In this document: positions 21,590-64,000 of the stretch, piece by piece
Position numbering within the stretch: the stretch's first letter is position 1
Layout of the letters: every line of letters starts with the position of its first letter
Origin: Ylistrum balloti
Taxonomy: Eukaryota
Length of the DNA stretch: 64,000 nucleotides
Reading direction: 5' to 3'
Assembly (NCBI RefSeq): GCF_031769215.1
Contig: NW_026781956.1
Span: forward strand, 806,001 to 870,000
Made by a program: the position numbers and the translations under genes
Notes under the pieces: generated by a model
What the model was told of the DNA's origin: nothing
Seen by the model: the letters and a program-made list of their open reading frames with translations, nothing else
The model's database searches: none

Positions 21590-24500
21590 GGCATATTGTG
21601 TAATATGTTTTAATGGTGTTGTGTATTGTGTAATATGTGTTGATGGTGTAGTGTGTAATGTGTGTTGATGGTGTAGTTTAGTGTGTAATATGTGTTGATG
21701 GTGTAGTTTAGTGTGTAATATGTGTTGATGGTGTAGTTTAGTGTGTAATATGTGCTGATGGTGTAGTGTAGTGTGTAATAAGTGTTGATGGTGCGATATA
21801 TTGTTTAATATGTGTTGATGGTGTAGTGTAGTGTGTAATATGTGTTGATGGTGTAGTGTAGTGTGTAATATGTGTTGATGGTGTAGTGTAGTGTGTAATA
21901 TGTGTTGATGGTGCGATATATTGTTTAATATGTGTTGATGGTGTAGTGTAGTGTGTAATGTGTGTTGATGGTGTAGTGTAGTGTGTAATATGTGTTGATG
22001 GTGTAGTGTAGTGTGTAATATGTGTTGATGGTGTAGTTTAGTATGTAATATGTGTTGATGGTGTAGTTTAGTATGTAATATGTGTTGATGGTGCGATATA
22101 TTGTTTAATATGTGTTGATGGTGTAGTGTAGTGTGTAATATGTGTTGATGGTGTAGTGTAGTGTGTAATAAGTGTTGATGGTGTATTGTGTAATATGTGT
22201 TGATGGTGTAGTGTGTAATTTGTGTTGATGGTGTAGTGTAGTGTGTAATATGTGTTGATGGTGCTATATATTGTTTAATATGTGTTGATGGTGTAGTGTA
22301 GTGTGTAATATGTGTTGATGGTGTAGTGTAGTGTGTAATATGTGTTGATGGTGTAGTTTAGTATGTAATATGTGTTGATGGTGCGATATATTGTTTAATA
22401 TGTGTTGATGGTGTAGTGTAGTGTGTAATATGTGTTGATGGTGTAGTGTAGTGTGTAATATGTGTTGATGGTGTAGTGTAGTGTGTAATATGTGTTGATG
22501 GTGTAGTGTAGTGTGTAATATGTGTTGATGGTGTAGTTTAGTATGTAATATGTGTTGATGGTGCGATATATTGTTTAATATGTGTTGATGGTGTAGTGTA
22601 GTGTGTAATAAGTGTTGATGGTGTATTGTGTAATATGTGTTGATGGTGTAGTGTGTAATTTGTGTTGATGGTGTAGTGTAGTGTGTAATAAGTGTTGATG
22701 GTGTAGTGTAGTGTGTAATATGTGTTGATGGTGTAGTGTAGTGTGTAATATGTGTTGATGGTGTAGTGTAGTGTGTAATATGTGTTGATGGTGTTGTGTA
22801 GTGTGTAATATGTGTTGATAGTGTAGTGTAGTGTGTAATTTGTGTTGATGGTGTAGTGTAATGTGCAATATGTGTTGATGGTGTAGTGTGGTGTGTAATA
22901 TGTGTTGATGGTGTAGTTTAGTATGTAATATGTGTTGATGGTGTAGTTTAGTGTGTAATATGTGTTGATGGTGTAGTTTAGTGTGTAATATGTGTTGATG
23001 GTGTAGTGTAGTGTGTAATAAGTGTTGATGGTGTAGTTTAGTGTGTAATATGTGCTGATGGTGTAGTGTAGTGTGTAATATGTGTTGATGGTGCGATATA
23101 TTGTTTAATATGTGTTGATGGTGTAGTTTAGTGTGTAATATGTGTTGATGGTGTAGTTTAGTGTGTAATATGTGTTGATGGTGTAGTTTAGTATGTAATA
23201 TGTGTTGATGGTGCGATATATTGTTTAATATGTGTTGATGGTGTAGTTTAGTGTGTAATATATGTTGATGGTGTAGTGTAGTGTGTAATAAGTGTTGATG
23301 GTGTATTGTGTAATATGTGTTGATGGTGTAGTGTGTAATTTGTGTTGATGGTGTAGTGTAGTGTGTAATTTGTGTTGATGGTGTAGTGTAGTGTGTAATA
23401 TGTGTTGATGGTGTAGTGTAGTGTGTAATATGTGTTGATGGTGTAGTTTAGTATGTAATATGTGTTGATGGTGTAGTTTAGTATGTAATATGTGTTGATG
23501 GTGCGATATATTGTTTAATATGTGTTGATGGTGTAGTTTAGTGTGTAATATGTGTTGATGGTGTAGTTTAGTGTGTAATATGTGTTGATGGTGTAGTTTA
23601 GTGTGTAATATGTGTTGATGGTGTAGTTTAGTATGTAATATGTGTTGATGGTGCGATATATTGTTTAATATGTGTTGATGGTGCGATATATTGTTTAATA
23701 TGTGTTGATGGTGTAGTTTAGTGTGTAATATGTGTTGATGGTGTAGTTTAGTGTGTAATATATGTTGATGGTGTAGTGTGGTGTGTAATGTGTGTTGATG
23801 GTGTAGTGTAATGTGTAATATGTGTTGATGGTGTAGTGTAGTGTGTAATATGTGTTGATGGTGTTGTGTAGTGTGTAATATGTGTTGATGGTGTAGTGTA
23901 GTGTGTAATATGTGTTGATGGTGTAGTGTGTAATGTGTTGATTGTGTAGTGTGTAATATGTGTTGATGGTGTAGTTTAGTATGTAATATGTGTTGATGGT
24001 GTAGTGTAGTGTGTAAGATGTGTTGATGGTGTAGTTTAGTGTGTAATATGTGTTGATGGTGCTATATATTGTTTAATATGTGTTGATGGTGCAGTGTAGT
24101 GTGTAATATGTGTTGATGGTGTAGTGTGTAATATGTGTTGATGGTGTAGTGTAGTGTGTAATATGTGTTGATGGTGTAGTGTAGTGTGTAAGATGTGTTG
24201 ATGGTGCAGTGTAGTGTGTAATATGTGTTGATGGTGTAGTGTGTAATATGTGTTGATGGTGTAGTGTGTAATATGTGTTGATGGTGTAGTGTAGTGTGTA
24301 ATATATGTTGATGGTGTAGTGTGGTGTGTAATGTGTGTTGATGGTGTAGTGTAGTGTGTAATATGTGTTGATGGTGTAGTGTGGTGTGTAATGTGTGTTG
24401 ATGGTGTAGTGTAGTGTGATTTGATTATGTAATGTAGTGTGTAATATGTGTTGATGGTGTAGTGTGGTGTGTAATTTGTGTTGATGGTATAGTGTAGTGT

Positions 24501-26580
24501 GTAATGTGTGTTGATGGTGTAGTGTAGTGTGTAATATGTGTTGATGGTGTAGTGTAGTGTGTAATATATGTTGATGGTGTAGTGTGGTGTGTAATGTGTG
24601 TTGATGGTGTAGTGTAGTGTGTAATATGTGTTGATGGTGTAGTGTGGTGTGTAATGTGTGTTGATGGTGTAGTGTAGTGTGATTTGATTATGTAATGTAG
24701 TGTGTAATATGTGTTGATGGTGTAGTGTGGTGTGTAATTTGTGTTGATGGTATAGTGTAGTGTGTAATGTGTGTTGATGGTGTAGTGTAGTGTGTAATAT
24801 GTGTTGATGGTGTAGTGTAGTGTGTAATATGTGTTGATGGTGTAGTGTGTAATGTGTTGATTGTGTAGTGTGTAATATGTGTTGATGGTGTAGTGTAGTG
24901 TGTAATATGTGTTGATGGTGTAGTGTAGTGTGTAATATGTGTTGATGGTGTAGTGTAGTGTGTAATATGTGTTGATGGTGTAGTGTAGTGTGTAATATGT
25001 GTTGATGGTGCTATATATTGTTTAATATGTGTTGATGGTGTAGTGTAGTGTGTAATATGTGTTAATTGTGTAGTGTAGTGTGTAATATGTGTTTATGGTG
25101 TAGTGTAGTGTGTAACATGTGTTGATGGTGTAGTGTAGTGTGTATTATGTGTTGATAGTGTAGTGTAGTGTGTAATATGTGTTGATGGTGTAGTGTAGTG
25201 TGTCATATGTGTTGATGGTGTAGTGTAGTGTGTAATGTGTGTTGATGGTGCTATATATTGTATAATATGTGTTGATGGTGTAGTGTATTGTGTAATATGT
25301 GTTGATGGTGTAGTGTAATGTGCAATATGTGTTGATGGTGTAGTGTAGTGTAGTGTGTAATATGTGTTGATTGTGTAGTGTGTAATATGTGTTGATGGTG
25401 AAGTGTAGTGTGTAATATGTGTTGATGGTGTAGTGTAGTGTGTCATATGTGTTGATGGTGTAGTGTAGTGTGTAATGTGTTGATGGTATAGTGAAGTGTG
25501 TAATGTGTGTTGATGGTGTAGTGTAGTGTGTAGTATGTGTTGATGGTGTAGTGTAGTGTGTAATATGTGTTGATGGTGCTATATATTGTGTAATATGTGT
25601 TGATGGTGTAGTGTAGTGTGTAATATGTGTTGATGGTGCTATATATTGTATAATATGTGTTGATGGTGTAGTGTATTGTGTAATATGTGTTGATGGTGTA
25701 GTGTATTGTGCAATATGTGTTGATGGTGTAGTGTAGTGTGTAATGTGTTGATTGTGTAGTGTGTCATATGTGTTGATGGTGTAGTGTAGTGTGTAATATG
25801 TGTTGATGGTGTAGTGTGTAATATGTGTTGATGGTGTAGTGTAGTGTGTAATATGTGTTGATGGTGCTATATATTGTTTAATATGTGTTGATGGTGTAGT
25901 GTAGTGTGTAATATGTGTTAATTGTGTAGTGTAGTGTGTAATATGTGTTTATGGTGTAGTGTAGTGTGGAACATGTGTTGATGGTGTAGTGTAGTGTGTA
26001 ATATGTGTTGATGGTATAGTGTAGTGTGTAATGTGTGTTGATGGTGTAGTGTAGTGTGTAATATGTGTTGATGGTGTAGTGTAGTGTGTAATATGTGTTG
26101 ATGGTGTAGTGTGTAATATGTGTTGACGATGTAGTGTAGTGTGTAATATGTGTTGATGGTGTGTTTAATAATATGTGTTTATGGTGTAGTGTAGTGTGGA
26201 ACATGTGTTGATGGTGTAGTGTAGTGTGTAATATGTGTTGACGGTGTAGTGTAGTGTGTAATATGTGTTGATGGTGCTATATATTGTTTAATATGTGTTG
26301 ATGGTGTAGTGTAGTGTGTAATATGTGTTGACGGTGTAGTATGTAATATTTGTTGATGGTGTAGTGTAGTGTGTAATATGTGTTGATGGTGTAGTGTAGT
26401 GTGTAATATGTGTTGATGGTGTTGTGTAGTGTGTAATATGTGTTGACGATGTAGTGTAGTGTGTAATATGTGTTGATGGTGTAGTGTAGTGTGTAATATG
26501 TGTTGATGGTGTAGTGTAGTGTGTAATATATGTTGATGATGTAATGTAGTGTGTAATATATGTTGATGATGTAGTGTTGA
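21590..26580. repeat. 30-bp GT-rich satellite, about 5 kb (GTGTAGTGTAGTGTGTAATATGTGTTGATG)
   Basis: Direct periodicity with recurring 25-bp and GCGATATATTGTTTAATA variant units. Confidence 0.98.
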
Positions 26581-26678: not shown

Positions 26679-29600
26679 GGAAGCCTGATGGGGTGTGGAA
26701 AGGATACAATTCCATGATCAGTGCTTACACCGAGTTAGACTGGCGGAACAGCCCTTTCACTTTGAACCTCAAGGATATCAGCTACACTGTGGGAGAGCGT
26801 CTGGGACAATGGTGGCAGGGTGCATGCTTCAGACCTGTGAGAAAAAAACGGGTACTGGACAACCTCACTGTCCAGTTCGTCAGTGGTCAGCTGACAGCTG
26901 TCCTTGGCAGCTCAGGTACGGCTTGTAATCATCTGGTCAACTTGGAAACCTTGGGTACAATGAATCACAATGGATAAGACAGGTATATCTTGTCACGGTG
27001 GATAAGACAGGTATATCTTGTCACAGTGGATAAGACAGGTATATCTTGTCACGGTGGATAAGACAGGGATATCTTGTCACAGTGGATAAGACAGGTATAT
27101 CTTGTCACGGTGGATAAATGGGGGCACATTTTTACATTTGATAAGACAGGTATATCTTGTCACGTTGGATAAGACAGGGATATATTGTCACGTTGGATAA
27201 ATGGGGGCACATTTTTACATTTGATAAGACAGGGATATCTTGTCACATTGGATAAGACAGGGATATCTTGTCACAGTGGATAAGACAGGGATATATTGTC
27301 ACGGTGGATAAATGGTGACACATTTTTACATTTGATAAGACAGGGATATCTTGTCACGGTGGATAAGACAGGTATATCTTGTCACGGTGGATAAATGGGG
27401 ACACATTTTTACATTTGATAAGACAGGGATATCTTGTCACGGTGGATAAGACAGGTATACCTTGCCACGGTGGATAAGACAGGGATATATTGTCATGTTG
27501 GATAAATGGGGACACATTTTTACATTTGATAAGACAGGGATATCTTGTCACGTTGGGTAAAACAAATATACATTGTAACTTTGGATAAAACAGGTATTCT
27601 TTGTCACATTGGAGAAGACAGATATACCTAATCACATTAGAAAAGACAGGTATACCTTATTGCACTGGATAAGACATATCCATCTTGTCACATTTGATTA
27701 GACAGATAAACTTGTCACATTTGATTAGACAGATAAACTTGTCACATTTGATTAGACAGATAAACTTGTCACATTTGATTAGACAGATAAACTTGTCACA
27801 TTTGCTCAGACGTCATATTGTCACAATGGATAAGACAGGTATACCTTGTCACGTTGGATAGGACATGTCTGCCTTGTCACATTGGATTAGATATGTCAAC
27901 CTTCTCACAATAAATGAAACGTGTCTTGCGATATTGGATAAGACTGACATTTCTGAATTCTAAATCAAACTGAGTAATTTCAGTATGATGTTTTGATAAA
28001 TAAGGACGACATCAAATTAAAAACTTGGGCCAGTAGGTGAAATAGACTCTGTTATAGCAGTTCACTTAACATGTTAATATATAGGCAGAATTTGTAAGCT
28101 ACCTCACAACAGGATGTCGTACTACACGCCAGCGAGTTCTTCAGATTTAACTTGTTAGCTTGCAAATTAACCTTTATTTGATCTCAGCATGAAACATTTG
28201 ACCAAGCCTTAACACATCACACCTTCTAATGACAAACCGGAGGTAAGCAGTCTGGAGGTCTAAATATAACCGTATTGTGAAAACCATCCTGGTCTTGGTT
28301 CAGGGAAACTGCTATACTGCAATTGTAACATAGGTACATTTAATTTACAAAGGACATATAGTTTTAATATCATCACTGGCAGTGAAATCAGACACCGAAT
28401 CCCAATAGATAAACTCTACAACACCATCACATGACATGTACGTCACAAAATTCCGGTGCAGTGTTAGAGCGATTGTGATTTTATAATTTATGTAAATATT
28501 GCAGTTCATATTTGAAATTTAAAAATCTCAACACACATTCTTTAATGAAGCTACCACATTAGCGTCAGAAAATGGAAAATGGTGTTCTACATTGAGCGAG
28601 CCAATTAACGTCGAATTTTCAGAAGTAAGGACAACGAACACCGTGTCTATAAAAGCTTACGGGCCATTTCCGTTGTAATGCGTCAAAACTTCGTCCTCTG
28701 TAAGAACATGCACCGGGATCACGAATGCTATGCTCTTTACTTCAATAATCCATTGACATTAACCTTTAATAAGACCACTTCTCATCTGATTCTGGTCAAC
28801 TTTCCATCAGAATGTCATAAAAATATTTACCAAGAAATTTAAAATGACTTTTTGAACAGCTGTCCTATTGACTAGATTGATTAATGTAAGTTAGACTATG
28901 TGGGTCCTCACTGTGTAACGTCTGTATGTATGTTTTACTGATAAGGTTTGAATGACAAATGTTTGTATACGCACCCCTATCTGACATGGTGCTGCAATGT
29001 AACTCTCACTAGTATATTCTTTACCAGGTTCTGGAAAGACGTCACTACTTGACGTCATAGCACACCGTACAGATGGCGAAGTGACAGGCAAGATGACACT
29101 CAATAAATTTGAATGTACAAAGGATTTTGTACGACAGACAACTGCCTACGTGATACAAACCGATCGCCTGTTACACACACTGACAGTTAGAGAAACACTC
29201 ATGTATGCTGCGCTCTTACGTCTTCCTAGCAAGACAACCGAGAAGGAGAGAAACGATAAGGTACATCGCCGTTGTCATATCATGGTGCAAGCTGGATAGA
29301 CTTCAGTTGTTCCACATGAACACAGTTATAAAAAGCAGTTCGCCTAATAGCATCGTCACTGTGCGATGCGACAACTTGTAGCTAGGTGGGCTTTTAGTCC
29401 TCTCTATCAGTCGTAACCTGCCTGGCTCGTTCTAGTGGCACTGTTCACAATATACACGCGTTCTTCTGAAATAATCACAAATAAGGAATTAAAACTCTGT
29501 TAATTAATGGGACTAGTGTACCACCCTATATGAATTTTGACTTTGTCACATTGAATTTTTTTCAGTCGCGCCCCAGACCTCAACATTTAGGTCTTTAGCA

Positions 29601-47700: not shown

Positions 47701-48824
47701 CAGGAACAATATAAAAAATTTAACAGTTGATTTGTACATCATTAAGTACTTATAGGCGATGTAATAATATTGATAGCTGTTGTAAACTGTACAATGCCAT
47801 ATACAATGACTCGTCCACGCCCTATGCATTATTTGATATCAGTTCCTCACAATGATCTGATTTTTTCCCATTCTTTTAAGTAGATTTCTAGATGTCCAGA
47901 CGATTTCTTTTAAAGGTATCCAAAATTCCGGTCCCTTGCATCACTGATGTGTCCTAGTCGCCTTTTAGATATCAAGACTTCCGGCCCCTAGCATTACTGA
48001 TGTGTCCTAGTCGCCTTTTAGATTCCAGACTTCTTGCCCCTTACATCATTGTCGTGTCCTAGTCGCCTTTTAGATATCAAGACTTCCCACTATTTGTATC
48101 ACTAACGTGCCCTAGTCGCCTTTTAGATATCAAGACTTCCCACTATTTGTATCACTAACGTGCCCTAGTCGCCTTTTAGATATCAAGACTTCCCACTATT
48201 TGTATCACTAACGTGCCCTAGTCGCCTTTTAGATATCAAGACTTCCCACTATTTGTATCACTAACGTGCCCTAGTCGCCTTTTAGATATCAAGACTTCCC
48301 ACTATTTGTATCACTAACGTGCCCTAGTCGCCTTTTAGATATCAAGACTTCCCCTAGCATTACTATTTGTATCACTAACGTGCCCTAGTCGCCTTTTAGA
48401 TATCAAGACTTCCCACTATTTGTATCACTAACGTGCCCTAGTCGCCTTTTAGATATCAAGACTTCCCACTATTTGTATCACTAACGTGTCCTAGTCGCCT
48501 TTTAGATGTCCTGACACTGTGACGACAATGTACCTGACATTGGAATCACAATGACAACAGTTTTACCAAATCTTGGCACCTTTATTATTTCGATATCGTA
48601 TCTGCTCTGTATCTTCTACGTTATTACGGTATTACGGTTAATGTTTCAGCCAATTTTCCCCCAATATAAGATACTTGTTTGTTAGTTTGTCGCATTTTTC
48701 AGATTGAAATTTTAGCTAGCTTTAATAACAAAAAATGCACAATTTTTTTCCGGTGGAATCGTGAATTTAACGATTTACCTCCGACGGCTCCTCCTATAAA
48801 GCCATGGAAGGAGTTGTCCGCCAT
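44744..48824 (-). CDS. SLC25A45: SLC25A45/47/48-like mitochondrial carrier, paralogue A (294 aa, divergent)
   Basis: Exons 48824-48779 (MADNSFHGFIGGAVG), 47420-47377 (44 nt, GVAVLLVGFPFDTVK), 45880-45812, 45653-45395 and 45210-44744 (TAA). All introns are GT-AG and the total is 885 nt in frame. Three Px[DE]xx[KR] motifs (PFDTVK, PIDHVK, PFDVIK) plus CREVP and RAFPVNA. Which member of the 45/47/48/29 group it matches needs a tree. Confidence 0.88.
46780..47160 (+). mobile_element. Penelope-like element RT-thumb relic in intron 2 of SLC25 paralogue A
   Basis: Reads TIKLYNKRDDFNFPIV, then after a frameshift FLDSNIPASLAY...SRVCSNYHDF...LVTQGFKRCKL. Confidence 0.7.
47162..47222 (-). mobile_element. 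tRNA(Glu)-like SINE head or truncated tRNA pseudogene
   Basis: Minus strand GGTCGGATGGCGCAGTGGTAACGCACTCGCCTTTCACCTAGCCGACCGGGGTTCGATTCCC has an A box (TGGCGCAGTGG), a B box (GGTTCGATTCC) and a CTTTCAC loop (TTC anticodon). The anticodon stem does not pair and the 3' acceptor stem is missing. Confidence 0.65.
47935..48510. repeat. 53-bp tandem repeat, about 10 copies, in intron 1 of paralogue A
   Basis: Unit CCTAGTCGCCTTTTAGATATCAAGACTTCCCACTATTTGTATCACTAACGTGC. Confidence 0.94.
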
Positions 48825-52290: not shown

Positions 52291-55200
52291 TTACCTATTG
52301 TCCAGATATTGTAAAATCTGTGAATAAACCACAAATGTCACAGCGTTAACAGGAAACGCCCGGACACATGTAACAATGCTTCCGCTGTAGAACACTCGGA
52401 GTCCCTCTGCCCTGTAGCTCTTGACTGCACAATCTATGGGTCCCTTGTACTGGCCCACCAGATCGGCTTGATAACGGCTCTTGACAACGTCAATCGGCAT
52501 GACCGAGAACCACGTCATACACCCAGCACAGCCGCCAGCGAAAAAGTCGGCTATGAATCCCTTCGAGTCAGTCCAGCCTTTATTTTTTATGGCTTCACTA
52601 AACGATTCGTAAATCAGAAGATAAAATCCGAAAGACGGGACTTCGCGCCAAAACATGACACCGCCACCCTTGTACAATCCCAACAATCCCTCGGTCCGAT
52701 AGACATGTCTGGCACACTCTATTGGCCCCTTGAAGTAAGGATTCTTGCCTGCTTCGCGCACTGCAATCACAAGAGTAACAATTCTTTTCAAAAGTATATT
52801 TTTATTTATATATCTTTTAAATCTTGACTTAACCCTAGTTTAGACAATGTATAAAGTTTACCATCGTATATAGTTGAGAAAGCAGAAATCTTTAATATGT
52901 TTTACCTCAATTTGTCTAGTTTCTTTTAAGTTTGGCTGTAATTGTGATCTTTCTACCATAAAACGAACAAAAAAGAAGTTAGGATATAACTTCATACTAA
53001 AACTACAAGTAAAAAAACATACCTGTTCCTTTGTTTGCATCTTGGGACAACTGGGACTGTAATACAACTTTAACATAATCGGTAGGTATGGCTGGAATTA
53101 GAGTTGCAGCGCCCCCTACACAACCTGCCAGGTAAATGTTGAGGTAGGACGATTTTTTAGTGTCTTTACCCTTGTCGAGGAACTTAAGGGTGTTCCCGTA
53201 GACGCCGAACAGAAGAGAGTTGACAACACTGTACGACATCAGCGGCCAAGACAAGCCTCGAAAGAAGCCGGCAGTCTGGTCAGGCAAACATAATCATGTT
53301 TAATTGAATCAGCGGAAACATTCTGTTTATTATTGTGGGACACTATACTATCTAAACCAAAACATTCTAGTTTATTTCATTTACAGTTACTTTGCCTTTC
53401 ATTAACATTTTTCTTCCGTTGGGACTAAAGTTTCGTCTCATATATTTTACGCATTTTTCTTTTTCGTTTTCGCGTTTAGTACCCAATACTGCAATATTTC
53501 AACACTTTGAAGTATTTATGATGATAAGGCCTGTTAGATTAATTAAAAAACCCGTTTATTAATCGAACATACACTTTTCTGGTTCTCAGAGGGAAACCTT
53601 ACATACAATTGTTACGACCAGTTTCTATACAAAGGACTATAAAGACAGGATCATAGTAGATATTGTCAATTATAAAAAGAATGTGTTTCAAAGGACTGGA
53701 ACAGGTGGACATATAGAAAGCTCTCTACAGCAGCCTGTCATATTAAGATATAATTTTTGCAGACATTATTTATAAGTTCAAACATAGACTAAACAATATC
53801 TGGAAGAACCATATCACAAATCTTATCCAGATTTATAGTCTTATACATGTGTGTCTACACAAATTGTTATGAAACACACCGTCTAAAGTTCAATATATTG
53901 GCAAAGATCTATGTCATCTAACACTCTAACATTGGGTGTCCCTTACTTAAAGTCCATTAAATGCTTATCCTAGTGTTATACCATATCACATACATCCTAG
54001 ATATATTAATAGTCACTTTTAATATAAACAGCAGACGTTTTGTTATTTTAACAAAGGTAAGTATCTTAACACAGGTTTTCAATGTGTAATCGTTGTGATG
54101 TATTTTCAAGGGTAATAGCATACTATTACTAAAAATATTATTTGGTTTGTTTTGGGAATAACATTATTACACTTGTGAATGTGAATGCTTACCCAGCCTT
54201 GCTTAAAGATGTTTGAAGCCATCGCCAATGTTCCTTTTCGCTGACCTCCATGCTGTGTCTGTAGTTTCACCTAATTTAAGAATATATATAACAACGTTTC
54301 AGTGTACTTGGATGTCTCTGGTATATAATAGCCACCGTATATATGTACTACATTAGCGTGATACTAAAGTGTTCCAAACACATGTCGACAACAAGAGAAT
54401 AATTAACGACAAAACATAGCAAGTATTATATCTCTGTCGTCATGTGATCTCTATTTACTATCTTACATTACGGTATCAAACTTTTATTTTTGTTTACCTT
54501 TGTCGTGTCAAAAGGATGTCCAACCAACAGGCCAGCGGAACCTGAAGTAAAACAGTGTTTATTCACTGTAACAAATCGCTTTCTTTATGTCTATAATTTC
54601 AATGTATTTTACTTCAATTTTCACATGTCGCTGTACTGTACGGATTGGTCAATTACAGTTAACATTACAAGATTATAAACAGATGTAGAAATGAATGTAC
54701 ATGTCGCTGTACTGTACGGATTCGTCAATTACAGTTAACATTACAAGATTATAAACAGATGTAGAAATGAATGTACATGTCGCTGTACTGTACGGATTCG
54801 TCAATTACAGTTAACATTACAAGATTATAAACAGATATAGAAATGAATGTACATGTCGCTGTACTGTAAGGACTGGTCAATTACAGTTAACATTACAAGA
54901 TTATAAACAGATGTAGAAATGAAAGTACATGTCGCTGTACTGTAAGGATTCGTCAATTACAGTTAACATTACAAGATTATAAACAGATATAGAAATGAAT
55001 GTACATGTCGCTGTACTGTAAGGACTGGTCAATTACAGTTAACATTACAAGATTATAAACAGATGTAGAAATGAAAGTACATGTCGCTGTACTGTAAGGA
55101 TTCGTCAATTACAGTTAACATTACAAGATTATAAACAGATATAGAAATGAATGTACATGTCGCTGTACTGTAAGGATTGGTCAATTACAGTTAACATTAC

Positions 55201-55750
55201 AAGATTATAAACAGATATAGAAATGAAAGTACATGTCGCTGTACTGTAAGGATTGGTCAATTACAGTTAACATTACAAGATTATAAACAGATATAGAAAT
55301 GAATGTACATGTCGCTGTACTGTAAGGATTCGTCAATTACAGTTAACATTACAAGATTATAAACAGATATAGAAATGAAAGTACATGTCGCTGTACTGTA
55401 AGGATTGGTCAATTACAGTTAACATTACAAGATTATAAACAGATATAGAAATGAAAGTACATGTCGCTGTACTGTAAGGACTGGTCAATTACAGTTAACA
55501 TTACAAGATTATAAACAGATATAGAAATGAAAGTACATGTCGCTGTACTGTAAGGATTGGTCAATTACAGTTAACATTACAAGATTATAAACAGATGTAG
55601 AAATGATTGTACATGTTGCTGTACTGTAAGGATTGGTCAATTACAGTTAACATTACAGGATTATAACCAGATATAGGAATGATAGTAAAGAAGGATGCAC
55701 TAACCTCCTATAGCACCCGCTATATAATCGTTTATAAGATGGCTAGGCAT
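52291..55750 (-). CDS. SLC25A45: SLC25A45/47/48-like mitochondrial carrier, paralogue B (296 aa)
   Basis: Exons 55750-55705 (MPSHLINDYIAGAIG), 54541-54498 (44 nt, GSAGLLVGHPFDTTK), 54270-54193 (VKLQTQ...KQGW), 53275-53023 and 52760-52291 (TAA). All introns are GT-AG and the total is 891 nt in frame. Motifs PFDTTKVKLQ, PTDYVKVVLQ, PIDVVKSRYQ, WREVPSF and RAFPVNAVTF. Confidence 0.92.
54623..55682. repeat. 76-bp tandem repeat, about 14 copies, filling intron 1 of paralogue B
   Basis: Unit ACATGTCGCTGTACTGTAMGGATTSGTCAATTACAGTTAACATTACAAGATTATAAACAGATRTAGAAATGAAWGT. Confidence 0.96.
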
Positions 55751-59795: not shown

Positions 59796-60431
59796 AATGA
59801 GGCGTTTTCTATACAGATCCAGTTTAATACCTATACCATATTTTGGGTTTAAAACAATAATTGGTGTAACAGTTAAAGTAGTTTGCATAACACATTTGCA
59901 AAAAACAACTTATCGGGAAAGTTTTATAGCAAAATGATCCTGAAAGACCTCCATTAGAGGAGATTTTTTGCCACGATATCTGTTTTCGATAATGCTAGAT
60001 AAACTGTGAAAGTCGGCCGTAAAATAAAGTCATTCACGTGTACTACCTGAGAGGTCATGTCATAAGGCCAGATGTGTTCGTATCAAACAGGTACCATTTT
60101 TCAAGTATAATGCTTGGCTACCGTGTGAATTTAAGGCTACTTCATTTGGGACATTCAAATTTTAGCGCAATTTCGCTTTTTTGACAAATCAGCGTAGTGA
60201 TGAATCAGCACATCCGCTAGGACTGCTATCGTGATAAGATTAAGATATCTTAATATAACGCAATACCTTTACAGCCAAAAATCGCTACAAAAATATTACC
60301 GCTAAGGTATGATTACATAACACAGTAACTGATACTCAGTTCTACACACCGTAGTAACCAGTCCACCGCTAACGTTCCAACCTTTATCAACCAGCGAACC
60401 ATCAATGTAAAAACCAACCCTTGATAACCTT

Positions 60432-60965
60432 GATGACCGAAGAAAAGTCAGGATGTAGATGTCGAGGTGTATTAGCACATACAGCTGACCGGAAGTAATG
60501 TCAGGATCTAGATGTCGAGGTGTATTAGCACATACAGCTGACCGGAAGTAATGTCAGGATCTAGATGTCGAGGTGTATTAGCACATACAACTGACCGGAA
60601 GTAATGTCAGGATCTAGATGTCGAGGTGTATTAGCACATACAGCTGACCGGAAGTAATGTCAGGATCTAGATGTCGAGGGGTATTAGCACATACAACTGA
60701 TCGAAAGTAATGTCAGGATGTAGATGTCGAGGTGTATTAGCATATACAGCTGACCGGAAGTAATGTCAGGATCTAGATGTCGAGGGGTATTAGCACATAC
60801 AACTGACCGGAAGTAATGTCAGGATCTAGATGTCGAGGTGTATTAGCACATACGACTGACCGAAGTAATGTCAGGATGTAGATGTCGAGGTGTATTAGCA
60901 CATACAACTGATCGAAAGTAATGTCAGGATGTAGATGTCGAGGTGTATTAGCACATACAACTGAT
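60432..60965. repeat. 53-bp tandem repeat, about 10 copies, carrying ACCGGAAGT
   Basis: Unit TGACCGGAAGTAATGTCAGGATCTAGATGTCGAGGTGTATTAGCACATACAGC. Confidence 0.94.
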
Positions 60966-61817
60966 AACCAGTACCCATCCCTTGTAATCAGATTATAACC
61001 ACATGATCTGCCTTAATAACAAGTCTGTACACCACCTGCAGTAGATACTTGTATGCTATAGATATCCTTGAGTGTGAAGATATCGGATATAACGGCGCTA
61101 TTACTGACCTGCTCCATGTCATTCATGATAACATCTGAGATAACGTTAGATGTGATTGTCCGACAGTATTATTTCCATTTTAATACACGTATTTCTTATT
61201 AACCGGTATATAGCTGAAAAACTGTTCTAACTTTCTAAATGAAATCTCGGCTTTATTTGATATCAAATGTCAAGAATGTTTAGTATCATCTGCGAAATAT
61301 GAGATGTATTCACTTCAAATAGCAATTAAATTCAGTAAAAAGTAAAATCTTCATTTTGTATGAAGAAAAGTTTCAAGTTCAAATTAAAGTCTAAAAGATG
61401 AGACAGCATGGCTAACCACGCTCTGTTCGGTCCTCTATGAAGCCCATTTTGGAGTTTCATATCCTGTAATGTATATATAGATTCAGGTTATACGTGTCCG
61501 AGGTCAACGTTAATAAAACCAAGGCGATATCAGATCTCTAACCGCATCTGCTGCCCTTATTTTAGTGATGTCGCTTGCAGCGAATATCTTCAGAAATATA
61601 TATCATAGACGATTGACACAGCTTTCACGGTGATATGTTGGTACAGTGAGGACTCGCGAAACAAAGTTTACCTACAGAATCCGGAAGTCTTGGAAACAGA
61701 TAATATGGCAGTCAAGACAACTTTGGTATAAAGCATCGACTTTTAACTTTCAGACGAGGAAAAGGTGCTTCAGAAAACAAAAAAGTTCTCAAACATCAGA
61801 ACATTGACAGAGACGTT

Positions 61818-63981
61818 ATGACCGAGAGGGTGATGGACCACTACGTGGCTGGGGCTTTGGGAGGTAAGATAGACCAATATCATATCCGACGGGGGCTTTG
61901 GAAGGTAAGATAGACCAATATCATATCTGACGGGGGCTTTGGGAGGTAAGATAGACCAATATCATATCTGACGGGGGCTTTGGAAGGTAAGATAGACCAA
62001 TATCATATCTGACGGGGGCTTTGGGAGGTAAGATAGACCAATATCATATCTGACGGGGGCTTTGGGAGGTAAGATAGACCAATGTCTTGCGGGGCTTTGG
62101 GAGGTAAGATAAGCCAATATAATACCTGACGGGGGCTTTGGAAGGTAAGATAGACCAATGTCTTGTGGGAGATTTGGGAGGTAAAATTGACCAATATCTG
62201 ACGGGGACTTTGGGAGATAAGATGGACCAATATCTGACGGGGGCTTTGGGAGGTAAGATGGACCAATATCTGGGGTAGATGAAGGAGGCAAGATTGACAA
62301 ACATCTCGCGGGAAATGAAGGAAATAAGATGGACTGATATATTTTGAATTACAAAGGGGTGTTAGAAAAGGAGATTCCTTATATTTTATTCTATGTGTGG
62401 AATTGTTAAGTGCAGCAATTAAATATAACTCTAACATAAATATAAATAACTCTGAGTATTTGGTAAACCAATTTGCTGATGATACATCTTTTACTCTCTC
62501 AGATTATCTTAATGTATTAGAAACAGTTTTAGGTACTTTTAAAAAAATTGCGGTAGTTTCCGCTCTTAAAATAAATATGGAAAAAAACACAAGTCATATG
62601 GATTGGGTCAAGACGGGGTTGTGGGACGGAAATTCTTCCACATAGAAATTTATTTGGAATCACCAGGGGAAATTCAAATTACTTGGTGTTACTTATAACT
62701 TTCAAAAAGAAAATATATATGAGGATAATTTCATAGAAAAAGTGCAGTCTATAAAATAACTACTGGGTAATTGGTCTTTTAGGAATCTTTGAAGAGTTAT
62801 TGTTATAAAATATTTAGCCTTAATACAGACTTTATCTGTTCTTCCAGATCCACCAAAACATATCTTTAATGATATACAGTCGACATTTTTTTAGATTTAT
62901 ATGGAAGGGAAATATTGATAAGATTAATAGAAATGTTATGTATGGTGACTATAATGAAGGTTGATTACATGTTCCTCACGTGAAGTCTTTTTGTCATGCA
63001 CTGAAACTCTCCTGAATTAAAAAACTATTAAAACCCATCCATTGCTCTCCTTGGAAAACTTTCGTTTTGGATAAGATAGAATTATTTGGCGGGGACAATT
63101 TTTCAGAATGACAAAAGAAGGGTTGACTAGTGTTTCCAATTTTTCAACACATTTTGGAAAGAAGTACTGTGTATATGGTCATCTTTGGTCGAAAATTCAC
63201 CTCCCACAACCCCTCAACAAATAGTTTCTCAACCAATTTGGTATAATGATTGTGTAAAAATAGATAGAAACCCTATATTTTACAGGCATTGGTGTTTAAA
63301 AGGAGTTTTTTTAATCAATGACATTTTTTTAATTTTTGAAATGTTTAAAGAAAAATATAATATTGATACGTCTTTTGTTAAGTATTATGGCATGATAAAT
63401 GCCATACAAAGAGAATGCAAAAGGATTACAAGAGAGCAAAATGATGTACCTATTCAAACTATTACTTCCAAAATTATGGCATTCATTGTGGAATGATGTT
63501 TTGCAGATCAATATGACTGATGAAGTATGGCGAACTTATTATTTATCCCCTAGACTTATCACTGATGATACTAACCTTCAGAATTTTCAGTTTATTAAGA
63601 TTTATTCAAGATATTGCACAATATTTTATGCACTAATGTTAAACTAATGCAAGCTAAATTGGTTGAATTAGAAAGTGAAAATGGAAGAGAAAAAATGTAA
63701 CATTTATTTTGGGATTGTTGTTATATTAAGGCTTTTTGGTCGTCATTCTTTAATCCTTTGAAAACAAAACATGGTATAGAACTACCTTTTGATTCTCAAT
63801 CCATACTTTTTGGGATTGGTGCTGCTAAATTTGATTACGAGGTAAACTTTTAATTGCTTCTCTTGAAACTAGTGTGGAAATTACATTTCATATTCTAATT
63901 AAACACACGCTTACCTGTGCTTATGCTGCCTTTTCAGGAACCGCCGGTTACTTTGTGGGGTACCCTCTAGATACAATAAAG
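61818..63981 (+). CDS. SLC25A45-like mitochondrial carrier, paralogue C (5' part only; continues beyond window)
   Basis: Exon 61818-61863 (MTERVMDHYVAGALG, 46 nt, donor GAG|GTAAGA) and exon 63938-63981 (GTAGYFVGYPLDTIK, 44 nt, acceptor TTTTCAG, donor AAG|GTAGAG). The 46 and 44 nt sizes and the phases are identical to exons 1-2 of paralogues A and B. Confidence 0.85.
61851..62300 (+). repeat. 41-bp minisatellite made of the exon 1/intron 1 junction of paralogue C
   Basis: Unit GGGGCTTTGGGAG|GTAAGATAGACCAATATCATATCTGACG, about 11 copies that degenerate towards the 3' end. Confidence 0.95.
62345..63860 (+). mobile_element. Degraded L1/Tx1-like non-LTR retrotransposon (RT C-terminus to C-terminal zinc-knuckle region) in intron 1 of SLC25 paralogue C
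   Basis: Fragments QFADDTSF, ALKINMEK, KFKLLGV, QPIWYN and HLFWDC (near 63700), with many stops and frameshifts. Confidence 0.75.
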
Positions 63982-64000
63982 GTAGAGTATGTGTAACTAT

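What the first reader, a model, noticed from the sequence alone, without database searches (positions are those of the whole stretch)
61818..62300. Minisatellite built from a 5' splice site: nine tandem extra donors and an alternative in-frame start
Seen: the 41-bp unit is exactly the last 13 nt of exon 1 plus the first 28 nt of intron 1 of SLC25 paralogue C. Intact GT donors follow the authentic one (61864) at 61905, 61946, 61987, 62028, 62069, 62104, 62145, 62181 and 62253. Three of them (61905, 61987, 62145) read AAG|GTAAGA, a closer match to MAG|GTRAGT than the authentic GAG|GTAAGA. From ATG 61818, donor 61905 shifts the frame into a TAG within exon 2, and all later donors include the TAG at 61911-61913. 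One shortened unit has an ATG at 62082 that reads MSCGALG and meets donor 62104 in the correct phase, giving MSCGALG-GTAGYFVGYPLDTIK. Inference: copy number of this VNTR could act as a dial for unproductive splicing/NMD. It could also give an N-terminally altered carrier by re-initiation after the resulting uORF.
Basis: partly seen in the sequence, partly recalled or inferred. Interest (0 to 1): 0.8.

Follow-up and report, generated by a model that had tools for sequence, protein, structure and literature searches.

The report
Splice-donor minisatellite in scallop carrier gene
The first intron of a scallop mitochondrial-carrier gene begins with about a dozen tandem copies of the end of exon 1 plus its splice donor; this repeat type is already known from lancelets and human genes and is common in this genome, so it is most likely a tolerated by-product, not a regulatory device.

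Summary
A 41/36-bp minisatellite (61851-62334) starts inside exon 1 of an SLC25A45-like gene of Ylistrum balloti. The frame claims and the ATG at 62082 also hold.

Three points change the picture:
- The unit copies about 32 nt of exon 1, not 13. This includes the Met6 codon, so a second in-phase start (ATG 62222 with donor 62253) was missed.
- Minisatellites cover 32% of the window, so one junction-spanning array per window is about what chance gives.
- The orthologous junction in Mizuhopecten yessoensis also has a 41-bp x5 donor array. Pecten maximus and Argopecten irradians have none.

The NCBI protein model uses the first donor, and that donor position is shared by both paralogues and three orthologues. 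No RNA run was available, so donor usage is untested.

The kind is known: amphioxus "mirages" and the human F7, CBS and 6-16 boundary VNTRs. This scan has already reported it many times on other DNA of this genome.

The "NMD dial" idea has a human precedent in CBS but no support here. The distal donors are decaying, and the array is absent from two related scallops.

Verdict: a new member of a known kind, of modest interest.

The parts
61818..61863 (+). Coding part of exon 1 of SLC25A45-like paralogue C (MTERVMDHYVAGALG plus the first base of a Gly codon; phase 1).
   Evidence: Sequence. Identical to residues 1-16 of NCBI protein P0122 of Ylistrum balloti. The locus L006 is identical to the window.
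61864..61869 (+). Authentic 5' splice site GAG|GTAAGA. It lies at the same codon and phase as in paralogues A and B and in three orthologues.
   Evidence: In Argopecten the homologous junction is seen in 7 transcript contigs.
61832..61867 (+). Inferred founding 36-bp segment: the last 32 nt of exon 1 (from the Met6 codon) plus GTAA. Its tandem duplication would give the array.
   Evidence: Alignment of the 36-bp unit with exon 1, 27 of 32 exon positions identical. This is inference.
61851..62270 (+). Main minisatellite: 41-bp units (five near-identical proximal copies), then shortened 35/36-bp units.
   Evidence: TRF period 41, 10.8 copies, score 560. Unit table.
62254..62334 (+). Degenerate 36-bp tail of the array (oldest copies). 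Donors lost here: GC at 62288, AT at 62324.
   Evidence: TRF period 36, 73% matches. Identity to the consensus falls to 26-27 of 41.
61905..62150 (+). Seven intact pseudo-donors with GTAAGA, at 61905, 61946, 61987, 62028, 62069, 62104 and 62145.
62181..62186 (+). Weakened pseudo-donor GAG|GTAAAA.
62253..62258 (+). Last intact pseudo-donor GAG|GTAAGA.
61911..61913 (+). TAG that ends read-through from ATG 61818 when any donor after 61905 is used.
62082..62103 (+). ATG reading MSCGALG, in phase with donor 62104. Poor start context (C at -3, T at +4).
62222..62252 (+). ATG reading MDQYLTGALG, in phase with donor 62253. It is a copy of the exon's Met6 codon, in a good start context (A at -3, G at +4).
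63938..63981 (+). Exon 2 (TAGYFVGYPLDTIK), with acceptor at 63937|63938 and donor GT at 63982.

Best explanation
This is a 'mirage'-type minisatellite: a tandem array whose first unit is the authentic exon 1/intron 1 boundary of an SLC25A45-like mitochondrial carrier gene of the scallop Ylistrum balloti.

**Origin (inferred).** A 36-bp tandem duplication covered the last ~32 nt of exon 1 plus the first 4 nt of the intron. Slippage or unequal exchange then expanded it. One variant with a 5-bp insertion (41 bp) spread recently through the proximal half. The distal copies are old and decaying.

**Consequence (inferred).** It is a tolerated by-product of a genome in which a third of the DNA is minisatellite. 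The spliceosome uses the first, cap-proximal donor, which is the only one that keeps the reading frame from the conserved start codon. The downstream copies are silent or give minor transcripts with early stops. The in-phase ATGs inside the array are relics or accidents of the copied coding sequence, not starts in use.

**What is shown.** The anatomy, the gene identity, the conserved donor position, a length difference between individuals, and the presence or absence of the array in related species.
For: **Structure and frames.**

**Locus and protein model.** The window is Y. balloti JAUZWB010000301.1, and the NCBI protein P0122 starts with exon 1 spliced at the first donor.

**Conserved donor position.**
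- It lies at the same codon and phase in paralogues A and B.
- The same holds in M. yessoensis, A. irradians and P. maximus.
- Seven Argopecten transcript contigs show the homologous junction, and show that exon 1 is the first exon.

**Repeat-rich genome.** There are 30 arrays covering 32% of the window. Between 0.25 and 0.76 junction-holding arrays are expected per window.

**No sign of conservation.**
- Distal units have lost or weakened donors (62181, 62217, 62288, 62324).
- There is no array in Pecten or Argopecten.

**Length and sequence variation.**
- All four other individuals carry one more 36-bp unit.
- Two of them share the same A>G change at +6 of units 1 and 2, which looks like exchange between units.

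**Structure does not explain donor choice.** Predicted RNA accessibility does not set the first donor apart, as in F7.

**Precedent.**
- Amphioxus mirages do not disturb splicing (PMC3087553, PMC3902484).
- In F7 IVS7 only the most upstream donor is used, even against improved pseudo-sites (PMC1557585).
Against: - No RNA of this species could be laid on the locus. First-donor use rests on an annotation model and on reading-frame logic.
- The donors here are strong, with 7 contiguous pairs to U1, unlike the weak F7 site. In F7 itself, pseudo-sites made perfect were used 70-90% of the time (PMC1557585, section 9).
- In human 6-16 and CBS the proximal pseudo-sites are used (PMC1557585, section 4).
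- Classical in-vitro work, recalled from memory and not checked here, found that among several strong donors the one nearest the acceptor can win.
- A donor array at the same junction in a second scallop genus could hint at more than accident.
Confidence: 0.7

Rival explanations
1. The extra donors are used at a meaningful rate and give transcripts with early stops that NMD removes. Array length would then tune the output of the gene. Re-initiation at ATG 62082 or 62222 would give a carrier with an altered N-terminus.
For: - Eight pseudo-donors are as strong as the authentic one.
- All but the first donor lead to a stop from ATG 61818.
- There are two in-phase ATG/donor pairs.
- Array length differs between individuals.
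- Human 6-16 and CBS use proximal pseudo-sites, and the CBS VNTR is reported as associated with reduced activity (PMC1557585 section 4; reference title in PMC2630376).
Against: - The protein model uses the first donor.
- F7 and amphioxus show no pseudo-site use (PMC1557585, PMC3087553).
- The array is absent from two orthologues, and the distal donors decay.
- In other individuals the last ATG-bearing copy has GGG changed to GAA in the conserved glycine motif.
- A start at 62222 would lie behind three upstream ORFs.
Confidence: 0.15
2. The array acts as a promoter-proximal cluster of U1 snRNP binding sites that raises transcription or protects the nascent RNA. Its effect would not depend on which donor is spliced.
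For: - Ten U1-complementary sites lie within about 450 nt of the start of the first intron.
- Exon 1 is the first exon in the Argopecten orthologue.
- Promoter-proximal 5' splice sites are known to stimulate transcription. This is general knowledge, not tested here.
Against: - There is no conservation: the array is absent in Pecten and Argopecten.
- Paralogues A and B have unrelated arrays without donors in the same intron.
- The distal donors decay.
Confidence: 0.05
3. The array is an assembly artefact: a collapsed or inflated repeat.
For: Short-read contigs break inside the array, and all four runs differ from the assembly by one 36-bp unit.
Against: Contigs of four other individuals from two studies enter the array from both sides with the same units. 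An independent assembly of another genus has the same kind of array at the same junction.
Confidence: 0.02

Closest known systems
Human F7 intron 7 37-bp VNTR (PMC1557585)
   Same: The first monomer spans the exon-intron boundary, so the authentic donor is followed by several identical pseudo-donors. It is length-polymorphic. The unit size is similar (37 against 36/41 bp).
   Different: - F7 copies only 4 nt of exon, in an internal exon with a weak donor (TGG|gtgggt).
- Here about 32 nt of exon are copied, in the first exon, with a strong donor.
- First-donor use is shown by experiment in F7 and is only inferred here.
Human CBS exon 13/intron 13 31-bp VNTR (c.1444_1467+7; PMC2630376, PMC1557585 section 4)
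   Same: The unit is 24 nt of exon end plus 7 nt of intron, almost the same layout as here (28-32 nt plus 4-8 nt). There are many copies.
   Different: In CBS two pseudo-sites are reported as used, and copy number is reported as associated with enzyme activity. Neither is known here.
Amphioxus 'mirage' minisatellites (Adh3, globins, TnC, PGBD5; PMC3087553, PMC3902484)
   Same: - Tandem duplication of an exon-intron boundary.
- Splice signals repeated.
- Regular splicing not disturbed.
- Length instability and concerted evolution, with the boundary units excluded from homogenisation.
   Different: The phylum differs (mollusc). The amphioxus globin units are longer (about 150 bp). Splicing has not been checked by RT-PCR here.
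[quoted passage not shown]
   Same: The authentic donor is followed by many pseudo-donors.
   Different: [quoted passage not shown] Here nothing is known about their use.

Membership tests
Exon-intron-boundary minisatellite ('mirage'; F7/CBS-type VNTR) | Head-to-tail array of short units (tens of bp) | tested here: met
   TRF period 41, 10.8 copies, score 560, plus a 36-bp tail.
Exon-intron-boundary minisatellite ('mirage'; F7/CBS-type VNTR) | The outermost unit is the authentic exon-intron boundary (the array starts inside the exon) | tested here: met
   The array starts at 61851 at the latest (61832 by the diverged homology), inside exon 1, which ends at 61863. The exon is confirmed by P0122.
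Exon-intron-boundary minisatellite ('mirage'; F7/CBS-type VNTR) | The splice signal is repeated in the units | tested here: met
   Nine further GT donors, eight of them GTAAGA.
Exon-intron-boundary minisatellite ('mirage'; F7/CBS-type VNTR) | Length variation between individuals | tested here: met
   One extra 36-bp unit in contigs of all four other runs. Caveat: these are contigs, the 41-bp part cannot be counted, and an error in the reference is not excluded.
Exon-intron-boundary minisatellite ('mirage'; F7/CBS-type VNTR) | mRNA is spliced at the authentic (outermost) site | tested here: inconclusive
   The NCBI model P0122 uses it. No RNA run holds the stretch.
Mitochondrial carrier family (SLC25, Pfam PF00153), SLC25A45/47-like branch (the host gene) | Mito_carr repeats; best named relatives are SLC25A45-like | tested here: met
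   Pfam Mito_carr in paralogues A and B. P0122 carries PF00153 and is named SLC25A45-like.
Regulated unproductive splicing coupled to NMD | A stop-containing isoform is seen in RNA and rises when NMD is blocked | not testable with these tools
   No RNA run.
Regulated unproductive splicing coupled to NMD | The alternative sites are conserved among related species | tested here: not met
   No array in the P. maximus or A. irradians orthologues. The M. yessoensis array has different intronic unit sequence. The distal donors decay.

The most novel reading that the evidence does not exclude
The donor array is not neutral. The same exon 1 junction has carried a tandem donor array since before the Chlamydinae-Pectininae split, or it is a recurrent hotspot, and the array is kept uniform by exchange with the exon. 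Measurable use of pseudo-donors followed by NMD, or U1 recruitment next to the promoter, would make array length a heritable tuner of carrier expression in scallops.
Probability: 0.1. Interest if true: 0.6.

Novelty: new member of a known kind. Interest (0 to 1): 0.3.

Why it matters
If the best reading is right, this is one more example of a repeat class that is known from lancelets and a handful of human genes and is very common in this scallop.

Its value is as material. It is a natural series of ten nearly identical strong donors in a first intron. The orthologues include one with five copies (Mizuhopecten) and two with none (Pecten, Argopecten). That makes a ready-made comparative test of how 5' splice sites are chosen among identical neighbours outside mammals.

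It also shows how copied exon ends leave in-frame ATGs and a dated trail of old exon states inside an intron.

Tried and rejected
**RNA reads.** The single run search (kind 'any') returned only DNA contig runs, so junction counting was impossible. Laying the four DNA runs gave polymorphism only.

**Mizuhopecten protein and transcripts.** I looked for the full protein of the C orthologue, to fetch its transcript contigs. Only a partial model lacking the N-terminus is in the protein collection (P0174).

**Outgroups.** Pinctada and Mytilus have a single SLC25A45-like gene and no C orthologue. Ostrea P0012 is not on record.

**Secondary structure.** Masking of the pseudo-donors by RNA structure is rejected. 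Mean unpaired probability is 0.39 for the authentic donor and 0.24-0.64 for the others.

**'AAG is a better donor than GAG'.** Rejected as a meaningful difference, because both pair with U1 from -2 to +5.

**Dating the array.** Both arrays carry lineage-specific exon states, which fits either independent origin or ongoing exchange with the exon. On the published tree, (Mizuhopecten,(Ylistrum,(Argopecten,Pecten))) (PMC11354973), one gain plus one loss and two gains are equally parsimonious. The question is left open.

Phases were worked out exon by exon, and full-length proteins came from the database.

Full report
**What is there**

The window is part of Ylistrum balloti assembly GCA_031769215.1, contig JAUZWB010000301.1. 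Locus L006 is identical to window 59818-64000.

At 61818 a gene for an SLC25A45-like mitochondrial carrier starts on the + strand.
- Exon 1 is 61818-61863 and reads MTERVMDHYVAGALG plus one base. It is followed by GAG|GTAAGA.
- Exon 2 is 63938-63981 and reads TAGYFVGYPLDTIK.
- The NCBI protein of this locus (P0122, 296 aa) begins with exactly these 30 residues.

Tandem Repeats Finder reports an array at 61851-62270 (period 41, 10.8 copies, 83% matches, score 560). A degenerate 36-bp continuation runs to 62334.

- Read-through from ATG 61818 ends at TAG 61911.
- Read from its first base, as after a phase-0 donor, exon 2 meets a stop.
- ATG 62082 reads MSCGALG and meets donor 62104 in phase.

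**Corrections to the anatomy**

The unit is not just 13 nt of exon plus 28 nt of intron.
- The 36-bp units near the 3' end align without gaps to exon 1 from the Met6 codon onward. 27 of 32 exon positions are identical, followed by GTAAGAT.
- The simplest origin is therefore a 36-bp tandem duplication of 61832-61867.
- The 41-bp form is this unit plus a 5-bp insertion.

The array shows an age gradient.
- Five proximal 41-bp copies are 39-41 of 41 identical to the consensus.
- Identity falls to 26-27 of 41 in the last copies.
- The distal donors have decayed: GTAAAA at 62181, AT at 62217, GC at 62288 and AT at 62324.

Because the unit contains the exon's Met6 codon, one unit still has ATG at 62222. 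It reads MDQYLTGALG and meets donor 62253 in phase, in a good start context. In most units that ATG has become ATA. The in-phase starts are thus a trivial result of copying coding sequence. In Mizuhopecten every pseudo-donor is preceded by an in-phase ATG for the same reason.

**Surroundings**

Two further SLC25A45-like genes lie on the minus strand and carry Pfam Mito_carr.
- Their exon 1 ends at the same codon and phase: GAG|GTAAAT in A and GAG|GTTAGT in B.
- B's N-terminus equals that of the annotated Mizuhopecten protein P0002 and of transcript-derived P0001.
- Each has its own unrelated minisatellite in intron 1, neither of which copies the donor.

In the whole window, 30 arrays cover 32% of the DNA. 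Suppose founding duplications fall at random. Then 0.25-0.76 arrays per window would contain a whole splice site, for 20-60 junctions. One such array here is about what chance gives in this genome.

**Other individuals**

No RNA run holds the stretch. Contigs of four DNA runs from two studies cover exon 1 plus the first one or two units, and also the 3' part of the array. All four carry one more 36-bp unit than the assembly. Sequence variants include:
- Ala13Val in exon 1.
- A>G at +6 of the authentic donor in two runs.
- The same A>G change at +6 of unit 2 in the same two runs, which suggests exchange between neighbouring units.
- GGG to GAA in the last ATG-bearing copy.

The array is therefore real and variable.

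**Other species**

Synteny C-B-A is kept in Mizuhopecten yessoensis.
- There the orthologous exon 1 (MSKRSVDHYVAGAMGG) is also followed by a donor array.
- It has five 41-bp units of 28 nt of exon end plus GTAGGTGGGACCG, each with GAG|GTAGGT.
- Pecten maximus and Argopecten irradians have the same exon and donor position but no array.
- Seven Argopecten transcript contigs show the homologous exon 1-exon 2 junction, five exons in all. They also show that exon 1 is the first exon, with at least 230 nt of leader.
- Pinctada and Mytilus have a single gene and no cluster.

The published tree is (Mizuhopecten,(Ylistrum,(Argopecten,Pecten))) (PMC11354973). On it, one gain plus one loss and two gains are equally parsimonious. 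The units of each species carry that species' own exon states, which fits independent origin or continued exchange with the exon. I leave this open.

**Mechanism**

The best reading is a tolerated boundary minisatellite with splicing at the first donor. Four points support it.
- The donor position is conserved in five related genes.
- It is the only donor that keeps the frame from the conserved start.
- The distal donors are decaying.
- The array is missing from two related species.

Predicted RNA structure does not single out the first donor.

The closest experimental model is human F7 intron 7. There, five to nine identical donors follow each other and only the most upstream is used. Pseudo-sites become active only when the upstream ones are destroyed. 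Pseudo-sites improved up to a consensus value of 91 do not compete (PMC1557585). Amphioxus 'mirages' likewise do not disturb splicing (PMC3087553, PMC3902484).

There are three reasons for caution.
- The F7 paper lists 6-16 and CBS as cases where two proximal pseudo-sites are used.
- Perfect pseudo-sites did compete in F7.
- The donors here are strong.

**Comparison and novelty**

The structure meets the defining features of the boundary-minisatellite class (see the membership table). The layout is almost that of the human CBS 31-bp VNTR, which has 24 nt of exon plus 7 nt of intron (PMC2630376).

Earlier follow-ups of this scan reported the same class many times on other pieces of this genome. 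One note says that such arrays sit at the same donors in related scallops. I found the same for this gene in one of three other scallop species.

It is a new member of a known kind. Its particular points are the first-exon position, the recorded decay series, and the 10/5/0/0 copy series across four scallops.

**Limits**

Donor usage was not measured. 

Noticed in passing
window 54623-55682 (minus-strand gene B, intron 1): Intron 1 of paralogue B is almost entirely a 76-bp x 13.9 minisatellite (96% matches). It starts 22 nt after the donor and does not copy the donor.
   Followed up: partly
window 47936-48507 (minus-strand gene A, intron 1): Intron 1 of paralogue A holds an unrelated 53-bp x 10.7 array. 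All three tandem paralogues thus have a different minisatellite in the same intron.
   Followed up: partly
window 26917-27891: An exon of the ABCG5-like gene ends ...GCTCAG|GTACGGCTTGT. About 50 nt downstream a 28-bp array begins whose unit holds GACAG|GTATATCTTGT. This may be an old, shifted donor-derived array, or it may be chance.
   Followed up: no
window 62397-63850: The rest of intron 1 is a decayed multi-copy element. There is a weak reverse-transcriptase match below Pfam's threshold (RVT_1, E 0.024, with a FADD motif). Summed contig word depth is up to about 15 times that of the flanks.
   Followed up: partly
window 61855, 61815, 61869/61910: Variants in other individuals:
- C>T at 61855 gives Ala13Val in the carrier.
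- G>T at 61815 is at -3 of the start codon.
- The same A>G change occurs at +6 of the authentic donor and of unit 2, in the same two runs.
   Followed up: partly
L001 2683-2892 (Mizuhopecten yessoensis, minus strand): The orthologous exon 1 donor carries its own 41-bp x 5 donor array. Each pseudo-donor is preceded by an in-phase ATG GGA G.
   Followed up: yes
window 21597-26577: A 5-kb array of about 170 copies of a 30-bp G/T-rich unit lies just upstream of the ABCG5-like exon at about 26680. GC skew there reaches +0.66.
   Followed up: no
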